Origin: Ylistrum balloti
Taxonomy: Eukaryota
DNA length: 64,000 nucleotides
Assembly (NCBI RefSeq): GCF_031769215.1
Contig: NW_026781914.1
Location: 1 to 64,000, forward strand
Direction of reading: 5' to 3'
In this document: piece by piece, positions 15,144 to 51,480 of the stretch
How the letters are laid out: each line of letters starts with the position of its first letter
Position numbering within the stretch: position 1 is the first letter of the stretch
The notes under the pieces: generated by a model
What the model was told of the DNA's origin: nothing
Seen by the model: only the letters and a program-made list of their open reading frames with translations
The model's database searches: none
Program-made: the position numbers and the translations under genes

Positions 15144-15479
15144 ATATCTGTATATATATATGTAAAGAAGGACTATTTGTTAAGAAAAACACACATTGTA
15201 GCATGCAATTTTTAAGGAAATAACATTGAAATCAGTATACATACAACAACTTTCAGCAATCATATTTTGCAAATTTTAGTAGTATATTAAATACAAACTT
15301 CAGCTGGTCATAGGAAAAAGTTTTTGGAGACAAAGTTTGTCTTACAGCTTAGAAAATCATTGTCATATATATAGGAATTATCTTAGAATTATGGTTTTTG
15401 GAACATAGGAAAAGATGAAATAGAGTTTTTAAACTATACAGGAGAGTGAGAGAAATGACACGCTTTCTTTCTTTTACAG

Positions 15480-16213
15480 TGGGACAATATTCTTGTATGG
15501 GGGCAAGAAACAGAAACCCAGTCAGACCTGGATATTTAACAGAAACGGGAGGATGGGACAACACTGCCCAAAATTTATTGGATAATAAGTATAATTGGAA
15601 GGACTATTCTCAACCAGAAGCTGCCCCTGTACAAACTTTTGGACAGGTTTCACAGGGAAACTCAACATCACTACAGACAGGAGATAACATACAACCTGTC
15701 CAGTTGCAAAAAGAGCCTCCAGGGTCACAGTTAAAAAATATGTTGACTTCTTCACCGCATGCAGGAAATGTGTTAGTGAAAGGATCACTGAAGGGAAACA
15801 CATTATCAAAATTCCAGTGTTCTGGCAACGTGTCTACAATATCCAAGGCACCATATACAGGATATGTTCGTGCTAAAACACACACAGTTACAAAGTCATC
15901 ATGTGCATATTCTAGAAGTATTTTTCCTAAAACTAGTTTAGGAGAAAATCCAACAGACAGTGATTCTTATAAATGTAGAATTTGTGCAAAAGTGTTTAAT
16001 TCTTTCAAAGCCATGAATAGACATTTAAGAGTACATGACCAACACCGTTGTAAGCAGTGTAACCAAGGCTTTAAGAGTGACTTGCTTTTACAGAAACATA
16101 ACACTGACCATCATACATTTAAGTTTCCTTGTGCCTCATGTGGCAAACTCTTTGGACGCAAGTTCACACTCAAACGACATGAAATGTATACCTGTAAAGT
16201 TTCAACAGGATGA
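15480..16213 (+). CDS. Module 5: terminal exon with three zinc fingers (C2H2, C2H2, C2HC)
   Basis: ctttctttcttttacag|TG at 15480 (phase 1). Fingers: YKCRICAKVF...RHLRVH, HRCKQCNQGF...KHNTDHH, FPCASCGKLF...RHEMYTC. TGA at 16211-16213. Confidence 0.88.
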
Positions 16214-17324
16214 TAGTGTGACGGATGTTTTATAGGTCTCTTGCATTTTGTCTACCTCTGTGATCCCTTCAGTAGCATAGAGTATCTGTCCAATATGAAG
16301 TTTTATTACAGTACAGCAAATCTGTCTTTGATAAATATCAGTCATGACTGCAGAAGTAGGACCTATCACAATTACAACTTATTTACTAATGCAGTTAGGA
16401 AGCTGTAGATTAATTGAAACACATCTTTGTGGTAGTAACATTACATTGTAATGTTATACTTGTCAAATAAGGGTACATGTATGTAGATAATTATTCGTAG
16501 CTTTTATTATAAATGTGTTCAAGACTGAGCAGATATTTCACAACTTTTTTTCTTTAAGATCATTTCTTGCCGTGTTATTTTATCGGTGTGTTTAATTATT
16601 AGTATTTATTGTTTTTTTTCTCAGGAAGAATTTTAATTGCAGACCTTTTATGCTGTTAGCTTACAAACTATACAGTTAAACCTAGGAACTATGTTACAGA
16701 TCCTGACTGTATTGTGAGTCCCACTAGTTGTACCAGATGTAAACTATTATTGTTAGATCTATATATGAAGTTCTAGTCTACTAATAATTATTGTGATTTA
16801 TGTTAATTATTTTTAATAAGTACGCGCATGACTATCTCAACACAATTGGTTAAAATGCATTTACAAGCTGTACAACAATGGCTTTCAGACTTTAATTGTG
16901 ATGTCACATACTAAATAATGATCCAATGTTACAATGCCTCAATAGTTTTGTAAATTCAGTTTTTTTCTTTTCTCTTTTTTTTTTATTATTACATTGTAAT
17001 GAATTTATGTTCGTATGTGTTGTGCTGTGTTATACAAATGTACCATGATTTCACACTACATAAATGTTTTAAAAGAAAGAGTCTTGCTTGTTGATTATCT
17101 GCTAGTGGATAGCAAGCTATCTTATCCTAGTACGGAGGATAATTGTATTCCTGTCTAAATGGGATGTGTATTGGACATAGTTTGCCGACCAGTTTATTTA
17201 GGTTATACAGATTAAAGGGAAAAAGAGTTTGCTGACCAGTTTATTCAGGTTATACAGATTAAAGGGGGACAACTTTCTAGTTACCAACTTGTGATTACTT
17301 ATGTATTGGTTCGTTGGTCTACGT

Positions 17325-18086
17325 TGTGTCCTTGTCTACATCACACAGGCGTCATCTGATTGGTTTGTTGTGTCCTTGTCTACATCACACAGACGTGATC
17401 ATATTGGTTTGTTGTGTCCTTGTCTACATCACACAGGTGTGATCTTATTGGTTTGTTGTGTCCTTGTCTACATCACACAGGTGTGATTTGATTGGTTTGT
17501 TGTGTCCTTGTCTACATCACACAGGTGTGATCTGATTGGTTTGTTGTGTCCTTGTCTACATCACACAGGTGTGATCTTATTGGTGGGTGTCCTTGTCTAC
17601 ATCACACAGGTGTCATCTGATTGGTTTGTTGTGTCCTTGTCTACATCACACAGGTGTGATCTTATTGGTGGGTGTCCTTGTCTACATCACACAGGTGTGA
17701 TCTTATTGGTGGGTGTCCATGTCTACATCACACAGGCGTCATCTGATTGGTTTGTTGTGTCCGTGTCTACATCTCAAAGGTGTGATCATATTGGTGGGTA
17801 TCCTTGTCTACATCACACAGGTGTGATTTGATTGGTTTGTTGTGTCCTTGTCTACATCACACAGGTGTGATCTTATTGGTTTGTTGTGTCCTTGTCTACA
17901 TCACAAAGGTGTGAACTTATCGGTAGATGTCCCTGTCTACATCACACAGACATGATCATATTGGTTTGTTGTGTCCTTGTCTACATCACACAGGTGTGAT
18001 CTTATTGGTGGATGTCATTGTCTACATAACACAGGTGTGATCTGATTGGTTTGTTGTGTCCTTGTCTACATCACACAGGCGTGATC
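17325..18086. repeat. 44/41-bp minisatellite, ~17-18 copies
   Basis: Unit tgtgtccttgtctacatcacacaggtgtgatcttattggtttgt, with a 41-bp ...ttggtgggtgtcc variant. Internal hairpin atcacac-ag-gtgtgat. Confidence 0.95.
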
Positions 18087-19464
18087 ATTGTATTATTTGA
18101 AATGAAAACTCTACAGTGGAATGTGTGTTTCACTTTGCCTTACAGAACATTCATATTGCTCTTGCGTCAGGTTGTCAACTTTAATATGTACTATATCTCA
18201 TATATATCAAATGGTGACATACCTCACATTTCTTCTCATGTTTTCCAGTATGCCAGAAGTATAAGTGATATTAAAAAATAATATTTGATGAATCCAAGCA
18301 AAACAGTGTCATGATTCAAATTAGGAGAAATATAAAACTGAATGTTTTACAGAATATGTCTTAAAAGTTGTCTAGTTGCTGGGTATGTTGATTTTTGAAG
18401 GAATGCCATTAATGTATATGTGTACTAATACATGTGTAGGTAATTCATAGATTTAGGCGATTCTTTATTCTGTTGAAGGCTTATAATTAAATCAACACAT
18501 ATATCTATGTGGAGCCCCTGTTAACCTATTAAGTCAAGTGGTTGGGACTGATTAAAGTCAGAATTACACATGTACATTTAATATATTTTAAATATACTTC
18601 AAATATATTTCACCATCAGGATATTCCATGTAAATGAACGTAACAAAAAACTTGTAATTATTGGTTTAAATATGTCACAAGTTGTACCAACTTCTGTGCA
18701 CCACATGTAGCAGCATACAAGGGTTATATACCTGAAAAAGAAAGCTTTGTTTAAAATGCTGCATTGTGCTGGTATACATCGGTAGCTATTAAAAGCTGAC
18801 AGGTATATTTCCTTACTAAACAAAATCAGCTGAACTTAAATTTACATGCAGAACATGATTACTGTAATGTATATCAAAAATGTATGATTTGATGACAATG
18901 CGTATTGTTATTATACAATTAATGGACAGTGATGTTGAAATACAACAAGTTAGTAATGAAAACTGCACAACATGTTTTATTCTACAACAGTGTTGTGTTT
19001 GCATTTGGATTTCATAGAAGACATATCAAAGCATTTAAAAATTCCATGCCTGGAGTATCAATTTCAAACTCTACAGTATGCTGTCTATTATATGTTAATT
19101 GTCATGTCATTGCACCAATTTTACCACAACAAATGTATTAGGGTCATGGTCATTATCTAGTAGTAGACATGTGGTATACTTGTAATGCTTCAGAAAAATA
19201 AATATGTTTTCAAGGTCCCAGGAAACACTTGTTAAACTCTGAAGCAAGATCATTTGAAAAAAACCAATTGAAATTATTTTTGCAGCGTAGCTTACAGTAA
19301 AATTGCTCTGTACCAGGTTGAAAATATTGTTCATAAACACTCTGTATACAGATGTAAAGATTGAGAGTCAAATGATTCTGGACCGATTTGTACAGCTATT
19401 GATAAAGAAGAGTCCTGTGGTAGATTAAGTGAAAGTTTATTGTTGTTATTGTGTTTAATTATAG

Positions 19465-20585
19465 GCACCCAGAAGCGTTTCGCAGAAACAACCAATGAAG
19501 AAACATCTTACAAACGTTTGAAAATTCCCAAGGCAGACAATACTCTAAAAGCTAATAGGAAGGCTTCTGTCGTATTTCGTGACTATTTGCGGGAAAAGGG
19601 GCAGGAGACAGACTTTGAACAGCAAAGTGTTGCTCAACTTTGCAAACATCTAGGACATTTCTACATGGATGCTCGTAAACATGATGGAACTCACTACAAA
19701 ACCTCTTCACTGGAGCAATTCCGATACTCCCTTAACAGGTACTTACGAAGCCCCCCTTTCAACAAGCAATATGACATAATCAAAGATTGTGAATTTTCTG
19801 AAGCAAACGTCAATTTCAAAGCAGTCATGAATGAATTGAAGCGTATGGGGAAAGGCGAGACGGAACATTATCCAGTTATTACAAAGGCTGATAGGCACAC
19901 AATTTATTCATCTCAGCATCTTAATGTCAACACGCCTGTCGGTCTTTACAACAAGGTCCAGTTTGACATTCGTTTGTATTTCAGTAGACGAAGCACAGAA
20001 AACATGCACAAGATGACAAAGTCAACATTTGAGATTGTGACAGACTTTGAGACAGGTTTGAGGTATGTGAGAAAAGCTGACGAAATGTTTAAGAATCTAC
20101 ACAGTCATGACAAAGATGTGTTATCATGTAACTATATGCCAGAATCACCTGGCTCACCATTTTGTCCTGTGGCATCGTTCGAGTCTTACATTTGCAAATT
20201 GAACCCGCAGTGTGAAAGGTTGTGGCAAAGACCGAATAGGGAAAGTTCAGCAGATAGTGTTTGGTATTACAACAGCCCAGTTGGAGAGAAGAAACTTGCA
20301 GTTTTTATGTCAGAGCTCAGTAAAGCCTGTAAGCTTTCATGTGTGTATACCAACTATTCCATCAGAGCCACTGGCAGTGCCATACTCTCAAAAAACATGT
20401 TTGATGCAGCTCAGATCATGTCCATCACTGGTCACCAGTCAGATCTTCCGCAGTCCATTTATCAAAGACCAGAGGGCCAGAGAAAGTGTAGGACAGGACA
20501 ATCACCACCAGATAATGTGGAACTGCAATGCATCAAGCTTGAATCAGATGGAGACTTAGAAAACATACTGCATGTACATCACTGA
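19465..20585 (+). CDS. Module 6: terminal exon encoding a Crypton-type tyrosine recombinase-like (DUF3504; KCTD1/15, ZMYM, KIAA1958-related) domain, ~373 aa
   Basis: gtgtttaattatag|GC at 19465 (phase 1); uninterrupted ORF. Family motifs: FYMDARKHDGTHYKTSSL, RYSLNRYL, NTPVGLYNKVQFDIRLYFSRRSTEN, CPVASFESYICKL, LWQRP, WYYNSPVGEKKL, YTNYSIRAT, IMSITGHQS..IY. The first Met is ~65 codons in. Confidence 0.9.
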
Positions 20586-23559
20586 CTTAGGAAAGTCACT
20601 ATGAACATATTGGATGGTATTGGTGTTTTCTTAAAGCCTTCAACTTCATTTGTTGCATAGGTTAGTGTCATATTTAAACATGTTTTATTAACCTGTTCGT
20701 TAGCATGGTTTTTACCCAATGGTTTTGCTCTTTTTTACACAAAAGTTTGTGGTTCAATGATTGACTGTAACCATGGTAACATCTCTACATTCACCCTTGC
20801 CACACTGCTGGCTGCAATGTTATAACACTGTAGTAGTTGTTGAATACCATCGAATGACCATTATTAGGATATTAAACAAGGAGGCTGTGTGTACAAATTC
20901 CCTTTTTGTTAATAGAAAATTATATTATTAAACCATGTATCCAATGCTGCATGTTTTGAAATTGTTTCACTAACCATTGGAAAATCATCTGAAAAGACTT
21001 CAGATTGTCATGGTTGACTTTTAGTGCATTTATATAAATGGAAACAAAAAATATTTCTATTTTTCTGCATAAGATCTGTATCAGTATAAGAACTTGTTAG
21101 ATTAATGAATTCACACTGACTTTTGTGAACAAAAATAGTTCTTCACCAATCTGGTTAATATAGGTCATACATAAATTTCAGTTATATCATTCTTTAATGA
21201 CTTGTTTCTCCTTGATTGAATCTGTCCTCATTGTATTGTTGATTCACATTTGTTTCCACACAAGGATTTATTGGAGAACATTGGAAATATTTCTTGAAAT
21301 AATCCTGATTTACAATTAGGATATTACTGAGTATTTGCACTTTAAATTGTATGTTAGTAAGTATTGGGTATGATTTCATCTTACAACATATACATCGATG
21401 GAATATTCAGTTTGCATTACTGTTTTCAGTGATATTCTTTTTTTCATAATGTCACTATGGCAATTACATTGGATGAACATCACCATCTTTTCTCATTTTT
21501 AAACTTTATCTTTTAATATTCAACAATCGTAAACTGAATTCCTGGAGATTGACAAGAGAAACGATAAACATGTGTTCATTTTTCATACATCTTAGTCTTT
21601 ATCTCTTACTCAGTATTAGTTTGGTACATCTCTGGACTAAAAAAAAATATGGGAATTCTACCAGCTTGGCGATAAGTATATGGTGTATTATCCTCTGATA
21701 AGGAAGGAGTTAATCATGTAGCCTTGCACTGACATATACTTATGTTGTTTCTGTTGATACAAAATGGTATTTATGATTAATTGCACCAGGTCAGAAGATA
21801 CACTTTTTACGATGAATCATCATTGGGAAATGTGTGTACTTAATTTACTCTCTGACTACTTCTATGACACAAGTACATCCTTAAATTCAATTTCTGTCAG
21901 CGGTAGATATCACAGTGTACTGTTACTTTAGGACTGTCTCTGTGAGCAATAGAGAAAAAAACATGGCTTCCTATCTGACGCTCACAAGAATGTGAGTGTG
22001 TTAATTTGATCCATAGTGGTACATCCACTTTAATACTGATCTATATTAAGATAAAAGTGACAGTACAGATGATGCTGGTCACCTAAATATCTGTGATTCC
22101 TTAAATTGTGCACATTGTTTTTTGTTTTAATGTATGACTGCCTGTACAAAGTTTTTTATAGCCTATTTCATAATAACACTGTTGAGAGCACTGTGATCTA
22201 GGTTTATTGGCCAATTCCATGATTGTCAAAAGATAATAGTTGAGGATAACTTTTAAACTCAAAGCAACAATCTTAGAGAAAATGATTGTTTTATAGTTTG
22301 GTGATCAACTTAAAAAACTTAAACATGAGTAGAGTTGTTATACCTTAATTATTCTGTGATAGTTCCTGGTGGCCAACATTACTTCAAAATCAGAGGGAAG
22401 CTGAATGAAGAGGTATTTGTCATCAGATACAATGAATAGTAAACTAATTTTAGGTGGGCTTATTAACAGCCATGGGCATATTGACTGATACATATGGTAG
22501 TGTATCTTATAGACAAGGAATTTTACACATTTAATATCCTTTTGTTATCTTTACTTCACCAGTATGCTGTATAGTGAACTAAATATATTTACTTAGCAGA
22601 TGTGACAGATGCTGCTCTTTAAGCTAGGCTACATGTTGTTTGATGTAGTTTGTGACAACTACCGATACATTCATAAAGATAGGCTATGTATTGTTTCACA
22701 TTATTATGTGATGTACTTGTTAACTACTGGTATATTTATAAGGTCACCTTGATGGTTTTTATTGTGTTCCCTATTAGTATGTTGCTTGGTTTCATTAAAG
22801 CTACAGTACATGTCACCTGTGCTTTTCCTGACCACAGAGAAGGCTAACTGCCTCTGTCTACAATAAAAAACTATCATGTGACCACTTTCTTCTCGTTTTC
22901 CTTATACACACCTTTATGGTTGTAAGTGGTAATATCATTACTCATTAGAAACACGACTTATTGCCAGTGCTGCATCCAACATATTTATATCATAACATTT
23001 TGCATACACAAGTTATCTGTAAATCTAAATTATCATGCTTCACATACTTATACATGTACCAAGGACAATGCAAATATATAACTCTTGGCATGTGAGGCTT
23101 GCATTCCTCAGCTTGGGACTCCACAATATGGCTCGTAATTGTAAAGGAGCCTTGCATATGGAAAATATTGATATCTACTAGAATTGCTTTGCTTTGTTTC
23201 ACTCTACTGTTATGGTATAGCAATACTTGGCTTGACAGTCTATGGAGGCTGAGAATGGCAGAAATGGCCATATGGTGAAGCATACCTGTATATAATTTTA
23301 AGATTGTTTTAGTTTCTTTCCTCTTCCAATTTATCAATTTCAATTCACAGTATCATTAGAATTTGGTGAAGAATGTTTAAAAACTGTTTGATATTTATTG
23401 TCTTCCATTGGATTTTAATTCTTATTCCTGGAAAACTGTCCGTTTTTTCTATATTTCATAGTAGAATCATCATTCCTTTCCCTATGATAACATCTCTCCA
23501 ATTTCTTCCAACCATCTCAGCAATTGGATCCAGGTACATTAAAAGTTTTTCTAAGGCTA

Positions 23560-24240: not shown

Positions 24241-25089
24241 GTCTGAAAGGCCAGGGGTATAGTTCAAGATCAGATGTCTTGGAATATACATAAAATATTG
24301 GAGAAGGCAATACAGGGAAATTTGCTACAAACCAAGAGATCAGCAAATCTCAAATGAAAAAATAAAAGAAGCCCAGATTTTGGAAGAGAGCTTAACTAAG
24401 CTATCCCTTGCCAGTTGAGTGTGGCAGGAGTATAAAAACTCTGATAACAAAATGATTACATTGGAAACACCACTTTTCATACTTATACTTAATGAATTAT
24501 TTATATCATGCTTAAGATCAATATTGAAATTCTCTTGGAGGTTGATTTAACAAACTTTGTGTTTGTTTTGTAACTTTAAAAAAAGATAATTAATGAAAGA
24601 AAAAGAAATATGTTCCAACCATGTGTTGGTGTAACCTGTCTACCACAATGAAAAAGCTATTTTTTAATTGAATAGACCTGTTCTGTACCAATCTCTGTTT
24701 TGTTAACATCAGTCAGGTTTACTTCCTTTAAAGCAATAAATTGTTGGCAATCCACATCACATTACTTCACAAACCATTGTGAACTGCTTATTGTGCACTT
24801 AAATATCAGTTTGTGCATGAAGCATCAACCAATCAAAAAGGCTGGAAGGTCATATACCAAAAGTGGTATATATCATAAATTTATCCCACTGACAGCTTGT
24901 TAACACAATGGTCTCAGAGTGAAATAACACAAGGTATTGTGGTAAAAAAATGAGTACCCCTCTGATGATAGATAGAAGACATAAGTTGTCAGCTTGGTAC
25001 CAAATTACAAAACAATCTACTAGAATCTTCATTAAAAATGTGGAAATTGATAACTACGTTTTCTTTAAAGTTATTTTTATTGATTACAG

Positions 25090-25433
25090 ACGTTATGTTT
25101 ATGAAGACTTGCACACCTGAGACATTCCTCATTAAAGAAAGTATCAATCAGATGTATAACACCAGCCACCAGCTAGACCTCAGCTTCCAGGAAAACTCTC
25201 CTAAATCAAAAAAACGTCACTTCTGTCCCGAGTGTGACTTTGTAACAGACCGACACTACAGTCTGAAGAGACACATGATAATGCACAACCAACAGTATTT
25301 TGTATGTAGTCTCTGTGGAGCAAGATTCAACGAAAACTGCAAGCTGAGAAAACATGTACAGATAACACACAAGGACCTACCACCTATCCAAACTACAACC
25401 ACTCCACAGCATTTCAACAGTGGGGCAGGTTAA
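25090..25433 (+). CDS. Module 7: terminal exon with two C2H2 fingers
   Basis: tttttattgattacag|AC at 25090 (phase 1). Fingers: HFCPECDFVTDRHYSLKRHMIMH, FVCSLCGARFNENCKLRKHVQITH. TAA at 25431-25433. Confidence 0.85.
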
Positions 25434-28400: not shown

Positions 28401-28596
28401 TCAGATTAAACTGGTTTTAGTTTTAACCCGAGTTGTGCATCAGTATAAGGATAAAATCCTGTATGGACAAAGGTTTCAGTTTGGGGAGAAAATGTTCAGT
28501 GTGAAGTGTTGAAGAAAATGAAGAAAATTCATCAACTGTGTTCAACATGAGGAATATTTTACATGTATTGAAGAACTGCATTGTCTGGTGTTTCAG

Positions 28597-29036
28597 AACC
28601 ATTTAACGACCCAAACCTTAACTTGATATTGGACAAGAATCATTTGAAGGGAAAGAGGTTGTGGAGGACAGAGGCAAGGTTCAAATGTGACCAATGCAAC
28701 TATACAACCGAACACAAGTACAGGATTAAACGCCATCAACGGATACACAAGGGAGACTACTTCAAATGTGACCTATGTAACAACAAGTTCACGGAGCTGT
28801 GTGAACTACGTGCTCATCGACAGTCTCGACACGAAGGCATCACTGTCAAATGTGAATTGTGTGGTCGGGAGTTTGCCTCCAAATATGCACTGTCGCATCA
28901 CCGCTCCAGCATGCACCCGAACAAATTTTACCGCTGTAATCATTGTGATAAGTCATTTGTGACCATGGGTAAACTTGTTATTCACTTGAAGTCTTACCAC
29001 AATGTTGAAATGGTCCAACATATGAATTTCACGTAA
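28597..29036 (+). CDS. Module 8: terminal exon with four C2H2 fingers
   Basis: ggtgtttcag|AA at 28597 (phase 1). Fingers: FKCDQCNYTTEHKYRIKRHQRIH, CDLC..HRQSRH, CELC..HRSSMH, CNHC..HLKSYH. TAA at 29034-29036. No Met until finger 3. Confidence 0.88.
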
Positions 29037-31622: not shown

Positions 31623-31658
31623 CGGATACAGAAGTTGACTGAAATTTTTATATTCCAG

Positions 31659-32089
31659 GCCAGTTCTACGACTATTGCCGCCAAGTCGTAGATGGGCAAG
31701 ACAAGAAAACGGACCCCGTGTTTCCCAGAATGCCATATACCGGAACACCTAACGTTTTCCAGTGTGACAGATGCACGTACACAACCAACGTGAAGTACAG
31801 GATGACGCGTCATCAGAGAATTCACAGTGGAGATTACCTTAAGTGTGACTTGTGTTCAGCAAAGTTCACGGAACCGTGCGAACTCCGAGCCCATCGCCTA
31901 TCTCGACATGAAGGAATATCTGTTGCATGTCCAGTGTGCGGGAAATTATTTCCTTCCAAACATTCTTTGTCCAATCATCGAGCTCAGCAACACCCCAAGA
32001 AGACTTTCACGTGCACCTTCTGCAAGGACAGATCATTTGTGAAACTCGGAAATCTGCAGCACCACATCGACACATTCCACAAATCCTGA
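31659..32089 (+). CDS. Module 9: terminal exon with four C2H2 fingers (paralog of module 8)
   Basis: tttttatattccag|GC at 31659 (phase 1), with an in-frame stop just upstream in the intron. Reads GQFYDYCRQVVDGQDKKTDPVFPRMPY...FQCDRCTYTTNVKYRMTRHQRIH...CTFC..HIDTFHKS*. AATAAA at 32282. Confidence 0.88.
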
Positions 32090-34301: not shown

Positions 34302-34669
34302 GTGTAGGAGAGAGGGGTCCCGCAAGACGAGGCAAAATAAAGTACCAAAGGATATCGCATTGTGCAACTATAGATAAACCGAAGTACGAATGTGACCGTT
34401 GTGACTACAAAACCCAGCTCAAATACCGGATGAGACGTCATCAGAGGATTCACAACGAGGATTTCTTCTACTGTGCGTCGTGTCCTTCAAGATTTACAGA
34501 ACCTTGTCGGCTTTTGGCTCATGTACGGTCACGACATGGTGGTCAAGTTCTCAAATGTGACTTGTGTGGGGCCGTCTTCCCTTCTGACGATGCTTTGAAT
34601 GACCACAAGATGTCTCAACATGCACATGCTCTTGCATTCAAAAACACACTTACATCATTACCACTCTAA
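34302..34669 (+). CDS. Module 10: terminal exon with three C2H2 fingers
   Basis: ttgatttccag|GT at 34302 (phase 1). Reads GVGERGPARRGKIK...YECDRCDYKTQLKYRMRRHQRIH...; the first Met lies inside finger 1, which the ORF track truncates. TAA at 34667-34669. Confidence 0.88.
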
Positions 34670-37083: not shown

Positions 37084-37466
37084 GAAGACAATTCAGGGGA
37101 GCAAAACCAGGTCCCAAACGAGGTAAAATGAAGAACCGGGGAATGTTACGTGGTACTACAGTATATAGACCAGGACAAATGTACGAGTGTGACCAGTGTG
37201 AATATAAAACCCAGGTCAAATACAGAATGCAGCGCCACCAACGAATACATAACGGGGATTTCATCTATTGTAACCATTGTCCATCTCGCTTTACAGAACC
37301 GTGTCGGCTTCTAGCTCACGTGCGATTACGGCATGGTGGTCAAGTGGTCAAGTGTGAACTGTGCGGAGCGGTGTTCCCTTCGGACGATGCTTTGAACGAC
37401 CACAATATGCTACAGCACGCACGAGTACTCACATTCTGTAGCCCGCGCAAACCTAAGCCACCCTAA
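37084..37466 (+). CDS. Module 11: terminal exon with three C2H2 fingers (close paralog of module 10)
   Basis: ttttctttcgcttattttcag|GA at 37084 (phase 1). Hand count: 67/80 aa identical to module 10 across the finger region. TAA at 37464-37466. Confidence 0.88.
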
Positions 37467-39333: not shown

Positions 39334-40680
39334 GATACATTTGTGAGGTTGTTTACGAACATCAATTTACTGAGTTGTTCTCTTAATCTTGCAATTGTAA
39401 ACATTTTATTTCGTGTCTATTTTGATTATTTGTATTTAGGTGTTCCAATGTAAACTAGTTAAATCTGTTGTTACATTGTTAATCATGTTTGATGTCAGAA
39501 TAAAGTTCTATTGTGATGGCATTGTTCTATAGTTATTTAAGATTTTCCTGTGGTATTTACACATCATTACAGATAAATGCTATGACGGTAGGTAAACTAT
39601 TCTCCTGGGTTCGACATTCACCATGACGATGGACCTGGTATGATTTGATCTGATTTCATTACTCTTATTCCGGAAGTTTAAACATCTACGGCTTTATCGA
39701 CGACATACTTCATACAAACCTTGGTCAATCCAAATAAGTAATGTTACATTCGCTTATGAGAATCATATATATATATATATATAAACGGAATCATCAAACA
39801 AACTAACGAACTCAAGCACATCCAGCTTGCTTCATAACGAACAATATTTCTCAGTGAGATCACTATGGCAACCCAAAAATTTCCAATAATTTTCATCATT
39901 CAGCTTTTCTCGAAACCGGATGTTGCGAGTTTGTCATTTGTCGACATCTTACTCGAATGTCGAGATATTGGGATCTGTGACATGTATGTTGTATACATTA
40001 GAGCCAAACGATTCTTCTATTTCGTGCCCTAAAGACCTAAAGTTTGAAGATGAGGCGACTAAGGAAAATTGAACGTGGTCAAAAACTGTCAAAATCTAGA
40101 GCGTGCACATGCTCCATTATTCAATAAATTCAGTAATTTTCATGCATGTATGGTTATTTCAGAACCACAATAAGGTCAATTGTTCCGGCAGGGTAAGCGT
40201 CTTCTTCAGTAAAATATATTTTGTTTATCTAGAGCTGTGGTTTAACCTCAGACAATATCATCGATAAAGTGGCCAAGCCCATGTGATTATCGATAATCTG
40301 TTGATTTATTTACCCATGTATATCATAATACTTATCAAAATATTCGATAATAAACTATTAATATACTGTATCGCTACCCCGCTATAGGAACGATAGAATG
40401 GAATCAACGACTATTGTGTTCACTGAATTTATATGTGAGCTCTCTTGCGGTACCGTATAACAAGATTTTAACGGATATTTTGCAGTTTGAAATATTATTA
40501 ATATCCGAAAACAGTTCCCCTGGTCAATTTTTAAGAGTATTTTCTTCAAACTAGACTCCTATGATCTCTGTTTCGAGGTCTCCTTGATCACAAACAATTT
40601 TAGCCTCGTCTTTGGGTTTTGATCACCTCGTCAGATCCTGTACGTGTCCTTATCCATAATGATTATTGGGTATATTATTA

Positions 40681-41305
40681 GTTATGTAGTTTGCTAGTGA
40701 CCCCCTACAGGAATAAAGGGGTTCAGTCAGATTGGTAGGGGGTGAGGGCGAAGGGGTTCAGTCAGATTGGTAGGGGGTGAGGGCGAAGCCCTGTAGGGGG
40801 TCACTAGCAAACTACATAACGAATTTATTGCACCAAGGACCCACATAAATATATATATAATACGTCCCATCACATTTCCTGGCATCCATGTAAAAATGGC
40901 CAAGACATTCGTCCAGTCGGACTACATCGTAATCTTCAAAATCTGGGTTTTGCTGCTTTTCCACCAAATAATCTTTGAACACTTTAGCGGCCAACTTATT
41001 AGCTTTTAACGTCTTATCAGCGTTAAGTGCCAGGCGTTTTTTTTCCTTGTCTGCAGCTGTCGTCTGCCCGAACCGCCCAGCCATTTTTGATCCGAGTCAA
41101 ATAGGTGCTTCGTGTAGGGGAAACAACTCGTACTAGATAATAGCAACTTCTAGGATTCACTCTAGCCAATATTCCGACACGGAACAGAATGTGAATATCG
41201 CCAATCTGTGATTTGAAATTACGAAGTGACGCCTTTCAGAGATAATGGATGGCGGCCATTGCCCCCTATATATTCAGCTGCCCCCTATAGATTTATAGGG
41301 GGCAA
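40681..41305 (-). mobile_element. Truncated/non-autonomous Crypton-like (tyrosine-recombinase) element relic
   Basis: Minus-strand ORF from ATG 41084 (MAGRFGQTT...LGHFYMDARKCDGTY) is homologous to the N-terminus of module 6 and breaks off at ~40860. It is bounded by a perfect 31-bp inverted repeat (40681-40711/40790-40820) and a hairpin at 41279-41304. The element limits are inferred. Confidence 0.6.
40812..41084 (-). pseudogene. 5' fragment of a DUF3504/Crypton recombinase ORF
   Basis: Hand alignment gives ~42/73 identities with module 6 (RF..TT, KRL, AD.TLKAN, VF.DYL.EK, DFE, LGHFYMDARK.DGT.Y). The tail YIYIYVGPWCNKFVM is unrelated. Confidence 0.8.
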
Positions 41306-41320
41306 GCAACGTCCAATCAG
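41078..41320 (-). promoter_or_regulatory. Promoter-like region upstream of the recombinase fragment
   Basis: CCAAT at 41166, 41201 and 41313. YY1-like GGCGGCCATT at 41251-41260, and AAAAATGGCTG overlapping the ATG on the minus strand. Locally raised GC/CpG. Motif match only. Confidence 0.35.
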
Positions 41321-41829
41321 ATCAATGCATTCTAGTCCGAGGTGCAATAATATAAAATGAATGTAAGAATGATTTTAAAGTTTTCGAGCTCTCGTATTAT
41401 AGGTGTTATTCACTTGTTTGTCTTTCTTTTTATACGCGCTTCCTAGTGTTATCTTCATAGAAACTTGCTCTGGAAGCGTGTGTCTTCCGTTTTCCTACCA
41501 TCGTATCTGAACCAGCGAATATACACAGGAATGTGTGAATATAAGTACGTGACTTGACTTACACAATTTACCAACATGGAAAAGACACGATAAATAATAC
41601 ACTTCGTTGTAGTATTAGAAATTTGCTGTCATCAACAGGTCATTGTTTTTCCTGATTGCTATCAGAAAAGACTAAACATCACGGTAGTAAAACTATAGCA
41701 CCTATAGTAAGTGGTTCGAGGATGCACGCGACACGTGTAATAGCTTGGAGACGGATCTCACAGTGAGTACATTTATTCAATCATAGAGATATATAAAATA
41801 GAAAAATCAGAGACCTAATAGAGTTGGTA

Positions 41830-44075: not shown

Positions 44076-46015
44076 AGCCGATAGTCTGACCACAACCGTT
44101 ACATAAATTAGTACCATTTTATACAGCATAGATTGATATCACTTTTTTGAAAAAAAGTATTGATATAAAATCATGTTAAAAAATGTTTAAAAAAAAACAT
44201 GCTCAAGGGACATGATTTATTGATTAATTGACATGGATACTTTGTGCACGTGTTTGTTGTATTGCTGATGAATATTTAATTTATGACATTCAACATACTT
44301 GTATACATGGTATTATAACGCTTGGAGTTTGGTGACATTTTCGGGACAAGTGAAGCGCGTACGTTTTGTTTACATAAATTGTTCAATGCTTGTAAACTTG
44401 AATTCCTTCTGCTCTCAAGCTGAATGAAAGGTTCGTCGTGTATCCCTGCAAACAAGCTAAATCAGTATCGATTTAACGATTTGCTGGTTATCTTTGTAAA
44501 CCATATTTGTAAGCATCGATCAGTTAGATAGTGATAAAGTGGTTGAAATGTCATGTCTGATGAAGTAAAGACAATCACTTTCTTTGGGACTTGCTTGAAA
44601 CGCGTTTTCGATGAAGCAGAAGACGCTTACCATTCCAGACCACACAGTCTTATTTTCTTTTCAGTGGTATTCCTTTAAACCTTCATATTCGTCATCGTTT
44701 CATAAAATTTTATATAAAGATTCTGTTAAGATATAGGTATTTTCTTTCAACAATAAACGTTGATAAGCTGAATATAAATTTCCATATTGGTCCAGTTCTT
44801 GTATACCTTGTTCCCACTTGAGAACCCGTCGTCACTAACTTAGGTTGGCGAAGATTTACATCGTGGGTGTTGTCGATGAAGGATAAGACGCTTACTCTTC
44901 TGGAAGATATGGTCTTACTCTCTTTGTACTCTTTCAGATGTTTCCATGTAAATCTTATTTGTTCATATGTTGCCCTTGTTTAATTGAATATGCGTTTGGA
45001 TGATGATTGTGTTGACATGTTGGTATTTCCTTGGATTTATGGATAGTGAAAGGGTAGTGCTAAACTATTTGAATGAATAACTTTTCTTGACAATGGATTA
45101 GCTGTATGGTGGTCAAAAAGGTAATAGTACCCACCTGTTAAATTTAAAGTTCATACCCTTGCTTTCTTGTCGTTCTCTTTCTTTGTTGGTACTGGTGCAT
45201 GGTCTACGTGTTGGTGCGCCATGTTGTTATTGATTTCTATCGATAGAGGCTGACGTCGTGCCCACTGTTTCTTGGTATAAGTACGACAACTTAATGATAG
45301 TTGTCCGTGGTAACAGTTCCTAATTTAGGTCGAATATTAATGTCAACTCTATCGTTCAGGTGGCAGAACCCGACATTGTTATAGACGTGGTGAACGTTAT
45401 TAGTTCGCCTTCTAGTAACTACTCGATCGTTTAAGGCGCTGAGCAAACGTCATGGTGTAGGGCTGGATATCGAACAATGGGCGTACAGAACTTGTGACCA
45501 TCATGAGCACCTCGTTCTTTATGTTAAACAGCACAACGTTTCAGCAAGAGTAAGAACATCTATGTTATGTCAGGACCATCGCTTTCCCAAATTTCACTGG
45601 GCCCTTCTGGAAAAAGGTGGATATAAATGTCAGCAACTTCAAAGTTGAGGACCATTTACAGGAAGGAGAAAACTCGACAAGGCCTATGATTCCACGATTC
45701 CATTAGACGTCAGTGTCTTTTTATGTGGATTTTACGTATATTGAGAGGCTAGCGAAGTCTTGTCACGATACCTAAATGATATGGAGTCAATTTAGAGATA
45801 AAACAGATGTTGATCATTACTACTGATAAAGAATTGACAGTTTGAATGGTAATATCGGTACAATAATATAACGTTTTCGTTTTAATATAACGGAGGCTAG
45901 TACATAAACCTCACGTCATGCAACATATTTCATTAGTACTCCGTAATTCTAAAGCTTACACAGCCTCCTCATCATCAGCGTATATTAACACATTCGCATG
46001 ATAAATATCGACACA

Positions 46016-46975
46016 TTAAGTAACTATACTATATATACAATAATACACTGTATATACTAAGTAACTATACCACATATTCAATAATACATTGTATACACAC
46101 ATGAGATTGCTATACCATATATACAATAATACATTGTATACACACATGAGATTGCTACACCATATACACCATAATACATTGTATACACACATGAGATTGC
46201 TATACCATATACACAATAATACATTTTATACACACATGAGATTGCTATACCATATATACAATAATACATTGTATACACACATGAGATTGCTACACCATAT
46301 ACACAATAATACATTTTATACACACATGAGATTGCTATACCATATATACAATAATACATTGTTTACACTAAGTAACTATACAAAAATACATTGTATACAC
46401 ACATGAGATTGCTATACCATATACACAATAATACATTGTATACACACGTGGGATTGCTATACCATATACACAATAATACATTGTATACACACATGAGATT
46501 GCTACACCATATACACAATAATACATTGTATACACACATGAGATTGCTACACCATATACACAATAATACATTGTATACACACATGAGATTGCTATACCAT
46601 ATACACAATAATACATTGTATACACACATGAGATTGCTACACCATATACACAATAATACATTGTACACACACATGAGATTGCTACACCATATACACAATG
46701 ATACATTGTATACACACATGAGATTGCTACACCATATACACAATAATACATTGTATACACACATAAGATTGCTATACCATATATACAATAATACATTGTA
46801 TACACACATGAGATTGCTACACCATATACACCATAATACATTGTATACACACATGAGATTGCTGTACCATATACACAATAATACATTGTATACACTAAGT
46901 AACTACACTATATATACCATTATACACTGTATACACTCACTAAGTAACTATACCATATACACAATAATACATTTT
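46016..46975. repeat. 45-bp minisatellite in two blocks (~46085-46365, ~46387-46890)
   Basis: Unit atacattgtatacacacatgagattgctataccatatacacaata; the blocks are separated and flanked by ctaagtaactatac-like motifs. Confidence 0.95.
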
Positions 46976-49900
46976 ATCTTGCCACTGCCATTGTCAGAAT
47001 ACACTAGTCACATATTCGGCTGTATTTTAGCAAGTACAGAATGACTTTCTGAAATTACTTTAAAATTACGTTTAACAATGAAAATTGCTGTTGAAATATG
47101 AGAATTTTGTATGTTTTATAATAATGTTATTTACAGAAATTCCTAAAATCGCTGTCATATCCGTTGAAGTTTGGAATTATAATTCTGCGCGGAGCAATTT
47201 TGTTTCATTATTATTATTGCGAACGTCATCAAGTAAAATTCAGCGTAACGTCAACGTCAGGAATGATCTGAATTTCGCAATCATTATTTCTGATTTATCT
47301 CTCCGCGATTGCCCGCTTTGTCTTCCATTTTATTTTGGTTATGATTGTTCTGATCTTTGCAATTTCAATTTTTAAAATAAACCAGCTTTTCCTACTGCTC
47401 CAAAATTTATGACGATATACTCTACCTATAGGTACACATACCGACGTGTAAATGTATACCTTCAGTGATTTAGATACATACAGTGTGCACGTATATATGT
47501 TAATCTTCCAACAACAAATTCGTCTCTGCACGTGATAAATGCAAGCCTTGAACCATGCCAAGAGGCAGGCTTCTGAAAACACAAGGTAAATTGCTATGGA
47601 AGTTTAAGTAAACTTGTATACCTGTTTCGGAACACAGCATGACACGTGGTGCCACGTGCACCACACATGCACAAATGAAAGCTTCGTCTCAATATCAAAT
47701 TATACTCAGTCTAATGTGAGCTGTATTCTCATCAAAAATAGAATTACGTCTAAAAATTCACTCTGCTTTGTTTCGTTTATAAAACTAATAAATCCATCGT
47801 GATAAAACACACGTGCATCTGGTAATTAATCGACTTTCATTAGAGTCGTAATATGGTCGGTTGTCTCACCTGCTGGTCAGAATTTTCAAGGTTTGCCCCA
47901 AGGAGGCCATGAGCCACAGTCGATTGCATACATGATGAGGATAAATTGTTTGTAGTCTTAGATCGAATTTTGATTGTCCTACATACATGGATGACAGTAT
48001 GTTTATCTACAGTGTGATCTATATGACCCCCAGCAGACAGATGTTACTATCTGTGTATTCCATCCTTTTTAGTTTTTTTCGTGTGACTTAACACAGTTGT
48101 CGATAACATGCAACAATGTATACATTTAAGGTAGTGTCGCCATTTTTAAAACAACACAATGTATCATTATCGTAATTCTGCAAGCAATACACTGTGTACC
48201 TATTTAGACTGTTATTCATAATGACTGTACTGTGAACCGCTCTGGAGCTAGTCTGGCCAATGGCAGCACATCTCTATTGGATAGAAAGATCACGTGGGTG
48301 AATACATTTGCTCTAGACTGCAACAACAGGGCGAGTCTTGGCTCTGGTGGAAGCCATTGACGAAGGGAGACACGAAACATTTCAATGGAATAATACAAAT
48401 TGGAACTTTTTCGTTGCTGACAAAAATCGTTTTGGGAGTAGCTGTATTTGCTAATATACTTCAGTGTCTGGTCGTGCAGGATTTGTGAGGATTATTTATA
48501 GAAAATAGCGACTAAGGTAAGGGAGATATCTGTCTTTGATATATTGTATATTTCATACAATTTCCAAAAGGATTGATACAATGGTTTGTGTGAGGGTTTA
48601 AATATAATGTCGATAAGTGATTGTCATGTTCTCCTTTGTTAGTTGAACCTCTTTCGTGACAAAGTCAACACATAAATATTTTCATTTATAATTTATCCCG
48701 GGCAAAGAATTCAAGCGTCGCCATGTTTCTCTCCAAGATTCGTGGAAGCGAATTTTTTAAATCCACGAATACTGTACTTACATTTGCCTACATTTCATTA
48801 ACATCAATGTGCTTGGTAGTTTGATAATATTTTCTCGTGAGAAAAATACCACAAACAAAAGTATGTGCAAAATGAACAGATATTAAAAAACACTGGGCTT
48901 TTGCACACATTTAAGTGCAAACAGCATATGTGCAATGTCGCAACCTTATGTAAGTGTGCGGAGAGTGGGCGTGTCAATGCCATCTTCCGTTTTGCTTTCT
49001 AATATCGTGTTATGAAATGGAAGCTAAGTTGTTTCGAGATATCATTATAATAAAGATTCCGTTATCAGGCGGGATCGACATTCCGATCAACATTGCTTTC
49101 ATCTTCTTCATATCTTTTCCAAATGCGCATGCTCGAAACACATGTACTAAAAAGCCTTTTTATCAGTTCTGTTTGGACAGATAAACTTTAACTAATTCTT
49201 CTGTGATTTAAAAGTCTAGCCTTGATTTGTTGGTCTTCGAAAAAAAAAGTTTATTGGTGGAATGTTAAGAATTTTTTAAGAACTTTCTTGTTTGGTGTCA
49301 CTTTCACTAAACATCTTAACTCAGTTCATGACGTCAATTTTAGTACGAGATATTTTCCTGGCGTTCTATGAATTTTTGATAACCATGATTTCAGTTAAAC
49401 TATTCCTCTATATCATAGTAAATTATTGTCATTGTTTTAAGGGCACAACACCTTTAGGCGTATGGTGTTTTTCAAACAATCGTAAAAGCATGAATTGACA
49501 TAGCGTTATCCTTATATTATCAGGTTTAATGTGCACATTGGGATTGAAATCGAGACGATGGGGTTTGTAATCAAGGATGTAAAATACATAAATAAAATAC
49601 TTATGTACCAGGAAGGTGGGGTCGTATACTAGGACACTTAACACTTAACATGGAAAGTACTATCTGAACACATGCGTCCTCTTGAATCCTCAATCAGAGT
49701 TTTATTTGGAATGCTGGCATCTATGTACCATGATATTATTTAATTATACACGGTGTTTCTCATGCTTTAACACACATGTACATGTCTTAAATAACACGCT
49801 TAAAAAACAGGCATGCTCGTTATTATGAGCATTTTAAACATGACAATGACCTTTTGTTGAGATATGCGAGACTAAATTCCATATGGAAAAAAATACTACA

Positions 49901-51165: not shown

Positions 51166-51480
51166 ATCGGGATACAGCTAAATCGTTAATTAATCAGGAT
51201 ACAGCTAAATCGTTAATTAATCAGGATACAGCTAAATCATTAATTGATAAGGATACAGCTAAATCGTTAATTAATCGGGATACAGCTAAATCGTTAATTA
51301 ATCAGGATACAGCTAAATCGTTAATTAATCAGGATACAGCTAAATCGTTAATTAATCGGAACACAGCTAAATCGTTAATTAATCGGGATACAGCTAAATC
51401 GTTAATGAATCAGGATACAGCTAAATCGTTAATTAATCAGGATACAGCTAAATCATTAATTGATAAGGATACAGATAAAT
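51166..51480. repeat. 27-bp minisatellite, ~11 copies
   Basis: Unit ggatacagctaaatcgttaattaatca. Confidence 0.95.

What the first reader, a model, noticed from the sequence alone, without database searches (positions are those of the whole stretch)
19465..20585. Transposon-derived tyrosine recombinase captured as one alternative exon, apparently keeping its catalytic Tyr
Seen: an intact ~373-codon ORF behind a phase-1 acceptor. By eye the catalytic set maps to R (FSRRSTE), K (EMFKNL), HxxR as NYSIR (His->Tyr), H (ITGHQS) and Y (QSIYQR). Known: Crypton transposons encode tyrosine recombinases, and DUF3504 genes (KCTD1/15, ZMYM2-4, QRICH1, KIAA1958) are domesticated from them, often losing catalytic residues. 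Inference: an independent domestication by exon capture, producing a fusion isoform that binds DNA and may retain nicking or recombination activity.
Basis: partly seen in the sequence, partly recalled or inferred. Interest (0 to 1): 0.72.

Follow-up and report, generated by a model that had tools for sequence, protein, structure and literature searches.

The report
Scallop gene exon from domesticated Crypton recombinase
A transposon-derived tyrosine-recombinase domain has been fixed for a long time in scallops as one of about a dozen interchangeable last exons of a transcription-factor-like gene. It most likely serves as a non-cutting DNA- or protein-binding module, which makes it a clean new example of a known kind of transposon domestication.

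Summary
Window 19465-20585 (+) is an intact 372-codon frame behind a conserved phase-1 acceptor, with no start codon. It matches Pfam DUF3504 and models as a two-domain Cre-like fold. The window is Ylistrum balloti (scallop).

The frame is single-copy. It lies at the syntenic place in Mizuhopecten yessoensis and Pecten maximus, is conserved only within the exon, and has dN/dS of about 0.1, like the rest of the gene.

NCBI's M. yessoensis isoform X2 joins a 374-aa constant exon directly to this exon. In Ylistrum that constant exon sits on another contig, C309, and has a matching phase-1 donor.

The host gene is a lola-like array. It has one constant exon and at least 11 alternative 3' modules in the window: C2H2 fingers, a BEN-like module, an unknown module and this DUF3504 module.

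But His to Tyr is shared by all four orthologues. The Lys loop and the His-Tyr segment have decayed, and one lineage has lost Arg, His and Tyr while staying under purifying selection.

The best reading is a domesticated, probably non-catalytic binding module. Splicing is not shown directly in this species, because no RNA run was available. The scan also noted other DUF3504 cassettes elsewhere in this genome.

The parts
19436..19464 (+). Pyrimidine-rich tract and AG acceptor (…tgtttaattatag). Conservation with other scallops begins here.
   Evidence: The last 14 nt are identical in Ylistrum, Mizuhopecten, P. maximus and L021. Upstream sequence does not align.
19465..20585 (+). Alternative 3' terminal coding exon: phase-1 start, 372 codons, stop at 20583-20585. 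It encodes a Crypton-derived DUF3504 / tyrosine-recombinase-fold module.
   Evidence: M. yessoensis isoform X2 junction …NTI|GTQKRF…; single copy; dN/dS 0.095.
19467..19856 (+). N-terminal helical domain (aa 1-130), like the core-binding domain of Cre. This is the most constrained part.
   Evidence: dN/dS 0.04-0.075 against Mizuhopecten; helices at pLDDT above 90. Cre matches span both domains; weak QRICH1-domain hit.
19878..20432 (+). C-terminal catalytic-fold domain up to …ITG. The Pfam DUF3504 match covers aa 138-284.
19989..19991 (+). Arg I codon (R175, RSTE motif).
   Evidence: It is R in Ylistrum, Mizuhopecten and P. maximus, and G in L021.
20091..20093 (+). Catalytic-loop Lys codon (K209). 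The surrounding TKNHRE-type loop is degenerate.
   Evidence: The loop matches the family consensus at 6/12 positions; free-standing relatives average 9.2 with a minimum of 7; pLDDT below 50 at residues 207-221.
20355..20366 (+). Box II YSIR: Tyr in place of the His of HxxR, with Arg II kept.
   Evidence: aligned to PHVLR of XerA; Tyr in all four orthologues.
20433..20582 (+). Fast-evolving tail that carries His II (20433-20435) and the nucleophile-position Tyr (20460-20462).
   Evidence: tail amino-acid identity 35-61% against 87-89% for the rest, and dN 0.23-0.47; pLDDT below 50 from residue 325. L021 is frameshifted here by a 7-nt indel.
20871..20876 (+). First ATTAAA after the stop, a candidate poly(A) signal. 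A second lies at 20927-20932.
   Evidence: This is a pattern match only.
15480..16213 (+). Neighbouring upstream alternative C2H2 zinc-finger exon with a phase-1 acceptor. It contains the donor ACCT|gtaaag (exon end 16194) that NCBI's Ylistrum model uses to reach 19465.
   Evidence: P. maximus isoform X3 and Argopecten isoform X2 end in this exon at its own stop.
25074..25433 (+). Next downstream alternative C2H2 zinc-finger exon.

Best explanation
Window 19465-20585 is one of about a dozen mutually exclusive 3' terminal modules of a scallop (Pectinidae) multi-isoform nuclear-factor gene.

Gene layout. A single 374-aa constant exon lies in this assembly on contig C309, at about 3632-2510 on the minus strand. 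It ends in a phase-1 donor, ATAG|gtaaga. Splicing from it to the phase-1 acceptor at 19465 gives a protein of about 745 aa whose C-terminal half is a complete two-domain tyrosine-recombinase fold. I did not build or search that joined protein.

Origin. The module came from a mollusc CryptonA-type transposon. It inserted into, or was captured by, the alternative-exon array before the split of the Ylistrum, Mizuhopecten and Pecten lineages. It lost its own start codon and has evolved since as an ordinary coding exon.

Function (inferred). Every other identifiable module in the array is a DNA-binding domain (C2H2 fingers or BEN). The decay of this module is concentrated in the catalysis-specific loops, while the DNA-embracing scaffold is kept. 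The most likely role is therefore a non-catalytic targeting module. It would bind DNA, or a DNA-bound zinc-finger partner as QRICH1's Crypton-derived domain does in Zincore.

What is shown and what is not. The exon, its phase, its synteny, purifying selection, the fold and the residue states are shown. The junction is supported only by annotation (M. yessoensis isoform X2). Splicing in Ylistrum, binding, and lack of catalysis are inferred.
For: Identity and fold:
- Pfam DUF3504 scores above its cut-off.
- Foldseek's top hits are QRICH1 (9hjt) and Cre, with TM 0.60/0.68 over both domains.
- A family profile aligns box II and the His-Tyr block to XerA, and aligns to QRICH1.

Exon status:
- The acceptor and its phase are conserved in four sequences, with no upstream ATG.
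- Nucleotide identity is 82-90% inside the exon and 30-45% in the flanks.
- The whole array is collinear in M. yessoensis and P. maximus.
- M. yessoensis isoform X2 (P0044) joins the constant exon directly to this exon.
- The Ylistrum constant exon has the same donor in phase 1.
- At least 16 annotated isoforms in three other scallops share the constant exon, and their tails map to separate window modules.

Not a mobile copy:
- The only DNA match in the 648-Mb genome is the exon itself.
- The best paralogues are 58-59% identical at the amino-acid level.

Selection:
- dN/dS is 0.095, against 0.094 for the constant exon and 0.04-0.29 for the other modules.

Origin:
- The exon clade has SH-aLRT 100 and nests among mollusc ORFs that keep the full catalytic set. 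These include a multi-copy Crypton in this same genome.

Loss of catalytic constraint:
- His I is Tyr in all four orthologues.
- L021 has Gly at Arg I, Gln at His II, and a frameshifted tail without the Tyr, yet its dN/dS is 0.08-0.12.
- The Lys loop and the His-Tyr block match the family consensus at or below the minimum seen in free-standing relatives. Non-catalytic blocks match at or above the mean.
Against: - No RNA evidence exists for Ylistrum. The only run served (X1) is genomic DNA.
- The M. yessoensis junction is an automated NCBI model whose read support I could not inspect.
- None of the seven P. maximus isoforms retrieved here (X1-X7) uses the exon, although it is intact in that genome.
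- NCBI's own Ylistrum model joins the exon to the upstream zinc-finger exon instead.
- Five of the six catalytic residues, including the Tyr, persist in three lineages. YxxR in place of HxxR occurs in the active telomere resolvases ResT and TelA (PMC11317167; the positional equivalence is from my own knowledge of Deneke et al. 2004). Loss of catalysis is therefore not proven.
- DNA binding is inferred from the fold and from the neighbouring modules only.
Confidence: 0.75

Rival explanations
1. The module is still an enzyme. It would use an R-K-Y-R-H-Y active site (Tyr in place of His I, as in the telomere resolvases ResT and TelA) to nick, relax or recombine DNA at sites chosen by the host protein, at least in Ylistrum, Mizuhopecten and Pecten.
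For: Arg I, Lys, Arg II, His II and the Tyr are kept in three lineages separated by dS 0.55-0.8. The Tyr is one of the few tail residues shared by all three. An active-site Tyr next to the nucleophile is compatible with catalysis in ResT and TelA (PMC11317167). Kojima and Jurka raised the same possibility for the Crypton ORF in bird ATF7IP (PMC3212892).
Against: The segment between His II and the Tyr is nearly invariant in free-standing relatives (KSVxSLxxY). Here it is degenerate: it carries a Pro in two species and a 2-residue deletion in P. maximus. The Lys loop is degenerate and poorly modelled. L021 lost Arg I, His II and the Tyr while the rest of the exon stayed under purifying selection. 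Tail identity is only 35-61%, so retention of one Tyr in three lineages is not significant.
Confidence: 0.12
2. The real transcript is the one NCBI predicts for Ylistrum (P0001, 'zinc finger protein 718-like'). In it the upstream C2H2 exon is spliced from an internal donor at 16194 to 19465, giving a zinc-finger plus DUF3504 protein. This could hold instead of, or in addition to, the constant-exon isoform.
For: The donor ACCT|gtaaag is a good consensus, is in phase 1, and its bases are conserved in Mizuhopecten.
Against: Those bases are also coding, so their conservation says little. In Argopecten (isoform X2) and P. maximus (isoform X3) this zinc-finger exon ends at its own stop. In the contiguous M. 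yessoensis assembly the annotated partner is the constant exon. In Ylistrum the constant exon is on another contig, so the annotator could not use it. The model also starts at an internal Met of an exon that itself has a phase-1 acceptor.
Confidence: 0.1
3. It is an independent gene nested in an intron of the array, with its own promoter and a small upstream start-codon exon. It would not be an isoform of the host gene.
For: The exon needs an upstream exon, and I could not see RNA. None of the seven P. maximus isoforms retrieved here includes it.
Against: Nothing is conserved upstream of the acceptor within several hundred bases. The phase equals that of the constant donor and of every other module. 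The M. yessoensis model joins it to the constant exon.
Confidence: 0.05
4. It is a decaying or recently inserted Crypton copy, that is, a pseudogene or an active element, and not an exon.
For: A recently active Crypton family with at least 40 non-autonomous copies lives in this genome, and one copy lies in this same locus at about 40670-41350.
Against: The frame is single-copy. It is only 55-59% identical to that family. It is syntenic and intact in three species and in a fourth sequence. dN/dS is about 0.1. It has no start codon of its own.
Confidence: 0.01

Closest known systems
Vertebrate DUF3504 genes domesticated from Cryptons (KCTD1 long isoform, KIAA1958 isoforms a and b, ZMYM2-4, QRICH1, WOC), Kojima and Jurka 2011, PMC3212892
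   Same: A Crypton tyrosine-recombinase domain fused to host domains and kept under purifying selection. In KIAA1958 the domain is encoded by isoform-specific exons.
   Different: The host gene, lineage (Pectinidae) and capture event are different. The vertebrate genes all lost the Tyr and Arg II, and mostly the His. This exon keeps Arg I, Lys, Arg II, His II and Tyr and changed only His I. It also keeps the N-terminal core-binding-like domain in one uninterrupted exon.
Crypton-derived ORF in an intron of ATF7IP in birds (PMC3212892, section 9)
   Same: An intact recombinase ORF inside a host-gene intron, highly conserved between distant species, predicted to be an alternative exon, with possible residual activity.
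   Different: The bird case had no transcript or annotated fusion, and chicken and turkey carry a frameshift. Here an annotated fusion isoform exists in a sister species and the exon sits in an array of alternative DNA-binding modules.
QRICH1 in the Zincore complex (PDB 9hjt; Bianchi et al. 2025, cited in PMC13538652)
   Same: It is the best structural and profile match. It is a non-catalytic Crypton-derived domain that works on DNA-bound zinc-finger factors.
   Different: Sequence identity is only about 16%. The domestication is bilaterian-wide rather than scallop-specific. No SEPHS1-type partner is known here, and the QRICH1 Pfam domain match is below threshold.
Drosophila lola and mod(mdg4) type loci
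   Same: Common 5' exon(s) plus a long same-strand array of mutually exclusive 3' modules, each giving a different DNA-binding C-terminus.
   Different: The constant region has no BTB or any other Pfam domain. The modules are heterogeneous: C2H2, BEN-like, DUF3504 and one unknown. Trans-splicing was not examined. This is a mollusc, not an arthropod.
Telomere resolvases ResT and TelA
   Same: An active site with a Tyr near the nucleophile where recombinases have His (YxxR).
   Different: They are bacterial enzymes with proven activity and no close sequence relationship. This is cited only to show that His to Tyr is not by itself inactivating.

Membership tests
DUF3504 / Crypton-type tyrosine-recombinase domain (PF12012) | Pfam model match above the gathering score | tested here: met
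   32.7 bits against a cut-off of 29.7, E = 9e-8, aa 138-284. The same holds for the M. yessoensis orthologue.
DUF3504 / Crypton-type tyrosine-recombinase domain (PF12012) | Two-domain Cre-like fold | tested here: met
   AlphaFold2 model with mean pLDDT 76. Foldseek finds QRICH1 at E = 1e-8 and Cre at TM 0.60/0.68 across about 340 columns.
DUF3504 / Crypton-type tyrosine-recombinase domain (PF12012) | Nearest relatives are CryptonA-type ORFs | tested here: met
   50-58% identity to mollusc and echinoderm ORFs with full catalytic sets. The exon clade nests among them in a quick ML tree. A multi-copy Crypton exists in this genome.
Catalytically competent tyrosine recombinase | Arg I (RxxE), catalytic-loop Lys and Arg II present | tested here: met
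   R175 with E178, K209 and R300. Arg I is lost in L021.
Catalytically competent tyrosine recombinase | His of the HxxR box | tested here: not met
   Tyr (YSIR) in Ylistrum, Mizuhopecten, P. maximus and L021. It is His in all 16 free-standing relatives that cover the column.
Catalytically competent tyrosine recombinase | His/Trp II and the nucleophile Tyr in a conserved helix | tested here: inconclusive
   H323 and Y332 are present in three lineages, but the intervening segment is degenerate, has an indel in P. maximus and is lost in L021. pLDDT is below 50.
Catalytically competent tyrosine recombinase | DNA cleavage through a covalent phosphotyrosine intermediate | not testable with these tools
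   This needs a biochemical assay.
Active Crypton transposon copy | Several near-identical copies and an own start codon | tested here: not met
   The only DNA match in the genome is the exon itself. There is no ATG before codon 65 of the exon. The position is fixed and syntenic in three species.
Domesticated (exapted) transposon gene | Orthologues at the syntenic place in distant species under purifying selection | tested here: met
   The loci are collinear. dN/dS is 0.07-0.12 across four sequences, equal to the constant exon.
Domesticated (exapted) transposon gene | Expressed as part of a host transcript | tested here: inconclusive
   It is annotated as isoform X2 in M. yessoensis. No RNA run was available for Ylistrum.
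lola / mod(mdg4)-type alternative 3' module locus | One common 5' region joined to many mutually exclusive 3' terminal modules | tested here: met
   Sixteen annotated isoforms in four scallops share the constant exon. Their tails map to at least 10 separate places in the window, all compatible with phase 1.
lola / mod(mdg4)-type alternative 3' module locus | TTK-type BTB domain in the common region | tested here: not met
   No Pfam domain in residues 1-374 of P0044. The Atlas search of residues 1-110 found nothing meaningful.

The most novel reading that the evidence does not exclude
The scallop isoform is a site-directed DNA-cleaving or topoisomerase-like enzyme. It would be a transposon recombinase with a ResT-like R-K-Y-R-H-Y active site that was captured as an alternative exon and is still catalytically used by the host, in all sampled lineages but one. 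This would be the first animal Crypton domestication that keeps chemistry rather than only binding.
Probability: 0.1. Interest if true: 0.8.

Novelty: new member of a known kind. Interest (0 to 1): 0.45.

Why it matters
Crypton (DUF3504) domestications are known from a handful of ancient vertebrate and bilaterian genes, and those have lost most catalytic residues. This case is younger, restricted to one lineage, and can be dated. The source transposon family is still active in the same genome. The capture point, a splice acceptor in an array of interchangeable DNA-binding exons, is visible. The catalytic site is caught mid-decay: one residue has changed in three lineages and four positions are altered or lost in a fourth.

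It shows how a locus built to swap DNA-binding modules can recruit a transposase-type domain as one more module. It also offers a natural series for asking which recombinase features are needed for the domesticated function.

The host locus has a novel constant region and C2H2, BEN-like, DUF3504 and unknown modules. I found no description of it in the papers I searched.

Tried and rejected
- RNA evidence. The look-up of sequencing runs listed no RNA holder. The one run laid, X1, covers exons and introns evenly, so it is genomic DNA from another individual. It gave 2 differences in the exon (one synonymous, and one Tyr/Cys at a site that also varies between species) against 8 in the flanks. That is too few to interpret.
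- The single 'joint' 15475 to 19503 comes from two 22-nt matches of an unrelated 6.6-kb contig. It is not a splice.
- The look-up of encoding contigs found nothing for P0001, P0058 or P0068, because only the longest product per gene is on record. P0044 and P0063 worked.
- Pfam found nothing in the constant region or in the 3348-3704 frame. The BEN-like frame 7478-7762 had no BEN hit, only sub-threshold matches to unrelated families. The BEN label comes from UniRef's name for P0056.
- The Atlas search of the constant N-terminus gave only sub-threshold leads.
- The careful ML tree did not finish in 300 s, so the quick IQ-TREE result is used. For the genome's own Crypton only the first open piece of L002 was put in the tree.
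- I did not build or search a joined constant-exon plus DUF3504 protein for Ylistrum. The exons were searched separately by reference.
- I could not identify the organism behind L021 (a Logan contig of SRR23580857). It is not P. maximus.
- The readings 'active insertion' and 'pseudogene' were rejected; see the rival explanations.
- The large representative-protein search was not used, because no claim here rests on absence of relatives.

Full report
**Observation.**
A stop-to-stop open frame runs 19365-20585 on the + strand. An AG acceptor, tgtttaattatag|GC, ends at 19464. The exon starts with two bases that complete a codon, so it is phase 1, and 372 codons and a stop follow. There is no in-frame ATG between the upstream stop and the acceptor. 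The first Met is codon 65 of the exon. Pfam DUF3504 scores above its gathering threshold (32.7 against 29.7 bits).

**Organism and annotation.**
A word-index protein search identified the window as Ylistrum balloti, a scallop. NCBI's 'zinc finger protein 718-like' (P0001, 605 aa) contains the frame at 100% identity. That model joins the upstream C2H2 exon to 19465 through an internal donor, ACCT|gtaaag, with the exon ending at 16194.

**Not a mobile copy.**
A DNA search of the 648-Mb genome with 19300-20750 finds only the exon itself. The closest paralogues are 58-59% identical in protein. Those paralogues (C356, C1237, C518, C772) are near-identical copies of a Crypton that keeps RRGxE, TKNHRE, NHSIR and GHKS…Y. 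That Crypton also has at least 40 short non-autonomous derivatives at 92-99% identity, and one of them lies in this window at about 40670-41350. A live source family therefore exists, but the exon is not one of its copies.

**Orthologues and exon status.**
- *The fusion isoform.* Searching with the length limits of the whole 605-aa model found M. yessoensis 'LOC110455972 isoform X2' (P0044, 735 aa, 85% identity). Its first 374 residues are followed directly by …NTI|GTQKRF…, which is the same acceptor.
- *Collinear loci.* The M. yessoensis locus (L025) and the P. maximus locus (L026) are collinear with the window, block by block. The DUF3504 exon lies between the same two zinc-finger exons in all three species.
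- *Conservation confined to the exon.* Identity to Mizuhopecten is 82-90% from the acceptor to about 20400 and 30-45% in both flanks.
- *Acceptor conservation.* The acceptor, its phase and the absence of an upstream ATG are shared by Mizuhopecten and P. maximus. They are also shared by a fourth sequence, L021, a Logan contig of an unidentified run with 73% amino-acid identity.
- *The constant exon in Ylistrum.* It lies on another contig, C309 at about 3632-2510 on the minus strand, with 90% identity. It ends in ATAG|gtaaga in phase 1. C309 read backwards and C57 read forwards are in the order expected from Mizuhopecten. This contig break probably explains NCBI's odd Ylistrum model.

**The host gene.**
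Searching with the constant region returned 16 annotated isoforms from Mizuhopecten, P. maximus, Argopecten irradians and Ylistrum, and from nothing outside scallops. All share the constant exon, and their tails map to separate places in the window:

| Window coordinates | Module |
|---|---|
| 2991-3944 | three exons, unknown domain |
| 6599-8609 | BEN-like, by UniRef's name for P0056 |
| 9563-10584 | large exon with weak finger-like motifs and no Pfam hit |
| 12900-13433 | C2H2 zinc fingers |
| 15480-16213 | C2H2 zinc fingers |
| 19465-20585 | DUF3504 |
| 28596-29036 | C2H2 zinc fingers |
| 31658-32089 | C2H2 zinc fingers |
| 34302-34669 | C2H2 zinc fingers |
| 37084-37466 | C2H2 zinc fingers; paralogue of 34302-34669, no isoform of its own among those retrieved |

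A conserved zinc-finger exon at 25074-25433 and a read-through finger tail of the constant exon add two more modules. Wherever I checked, the acceptors are phase 1. This is lola-like architecture, but the constant region has no BTB or any other Pfam domain.

**Selection.**
Against Mizuhopecten the exon has dN 0.078, dS 0.82 and dN/dS 0.095. The constant exon has 0.094 and the other modules 0.04-0.29. Up to …ITG, dN/dS is 0.07-0.12 in all six pairwise comparisons of the four sequences. The tail beyond that point is only 35-61% identical, with dN 0.23-0.47.

**Fold and residues.**
An AlphaFold2 model built on a 20-sequence alignment has mean pLDDT 76. Confidence is low only at residues 207-221, the Lys loop, and from residue 325 onwards, the tail. 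Foldseek's best hits are QRICH1 in the Zincore-ZFP91-DNA complex, and Cre over both domains with TM 0.60/0.68. A family profile aligns box II and the His-Tyr block to XerA residue for residue.

| Position | Ylistrum, Mizuhopecten, P. maximus | L021 |
|---|---|---|
| Arg I (R175) | Arg | Gly |
| Lys (K209) | Lys | Lys |
| His I (Y297) | Tyr | Tyr |
| Arg II (R300) | Arg | Arg |
| His II (H323) | His | Gln |
| Tyr (Y332) | Tyr | lost: a 7-nt indel shifts the tail |

P. maximus also has two fewer residues between His II and the Tyr.

Matches to the consensus of free-standing relatives:

| Block | Exon sequences | Free-standing relatives |
|---|---|---|
| Non-catalytic, 41 positions | 29-31 | mean 26 |
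| Non-catalytic, 31 positions | 25 | mean 21 |
| Lys loop, 12 positions | 2-7 | mean 9.2, minimum 7 |
| His-Tyr block, 16 positions | 5-11 | mean 12.9 |

The scaffold is kept and the catalysis-specific elements are decaying.

**Origin.**
In a quick ML tree the three exon sequences then in hand (Ylistrum, Mizuhopecten, L021) form a clade with SH-aLRT 100. It lies inside a group (SH-aLRT 90) of mollusc ORFs from Mytilus, Ostrea, Pinctada, Saccostrea, Liolophura and this genome's own Crypton, all catalytically intact. The capture is therefore a mollusc event, separate from the vertebrate and bilaterian DUF3504 genes of Kojima and Jurka (PMC3212892). It predates the divergence of the four lineages, because all of them share His to Tyr.

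**Mechanism.**
The most likely mechanism (0.75) is that the constant exon splices to 19465 to give an isoform whose C-terminus is a non-catalytic recombinase fold used for targeting. That module takes the place the zinc-finger or BEN modules hold in the other isoforms. It would bind DNA, or a DNA-bound finger protein as in QRICH1/Zincore (Bianchi et al. 2025, cited in PMC13538652).

Residual catalysis cannot be excluded (about 0.1). Three lineages keep five of the six residues. A Tyr at the His I position is compatible with catalysis in ResT and TelA (PMC11317167; the positional equivalence is from my own knowledge).

The NCBI zinc-finger to DUF3504 model is probably an artefact of the contig break.

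**Comparison and novelty.**
The closest precedents are the isoform-specific DUF3504 exons of KIAA1958, the KCTD1 long isoform, and the conserved Crypton ORF in bird ATF7IP, which was also predicted to be an alternative exon. This is a new, independent and better-resolved member of that kind. The proteins are already in NCBI as unnamed predictions, but I found no paper describing them or the host locus.

**Limits.**
- No RNA run was available, and X1 is DNA.
- The species behind L021 is unknown.
- The joined spliced protein for Ylistrum was not built or searched. Exons were handled separately by reference.

Noticed in passing
window 1-37500 (+) with G000:C309:3632-1951 (-): The whole left part of the window is a lola-like array. 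One 374-aa constant exon, which lies on another contig and has no known domain, is joined to at least 11 alternative 3' modules in the window, plus a read-through zinc-finger tail of the constant exon on C309. The modules are C2H2 fingers, a three-exon BEN-like module at 6599-8609, a three-exon module of unknown domain at 2991-3944, and the DUF3504 exon. The array is conserved and collinear in Mizuhopecten and Pecten maximus. I found no description of it in the papers searched.
   Followed up: partly
window ~40670-41350 (-): One copy of a repeat of about 560-680 bp with at least 40 copies at 92-99% identity. Its roughly 490 bp of 5' sequence, including an 83-codon frame, equals the 5' end of full-length Crypton copies (C1237:43177, C356:52649, C518:159, C772:92853) that keep the full catalytic set. 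This is a recently active Crypton with non-autonomous derivatives. It is only 55-58% identical to the exon, so it is not the exon's direct source.
   Followed up: partly
G000:C88:1301336-1456295 (L008-L011, L014, L016, L017): A tandem cluster of at least seven intact DUF3504 frames of about 330 aa, 29-36% identical to the exon, lacking the HxxR His and other catalytic residues. This looks like a second, separate domesticated DUF3504 family.
   Followed up: no
window 15480-16213 and 19465 (NCBI model P0001): NCBI's Ylistrum gene model joins a zinc-finger exon to the DUF3504 exon through an internal donor at 16194. The true 5' exon lies on contig C309, so the model is probably a by-product of assembly fragmentation.
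   Followed up: partly
L026:31434-32513 (Pecten maximus LR736843.1): The DUF3504 exon is intact and syntenic in P. maximus, but none of the seven annotated isoforms retrieved here (X1-X7) uses it. Either the isoform is unannotated or the exon is rarely used.
   Followed up: no
G000:C309:6704-6877 (+) and G000:C367:692195-692488 (-); L025:2474-2328 (-): Paralogues of the constant exon's N-terminal conserved segment of about 60-100 aa. One is transcribed divergently right next to the gene in both Ylistrum and Mizuhopecten. This suggests a small family that shares an undescribed N-terminal domain.
   Followed up: no
window 46000-47100, 51100-53300, 55200-55950: Long tandem-repeat tracts that give spurious long open frames on both strands. 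They are unrelated to the finding.
   Followed up: no
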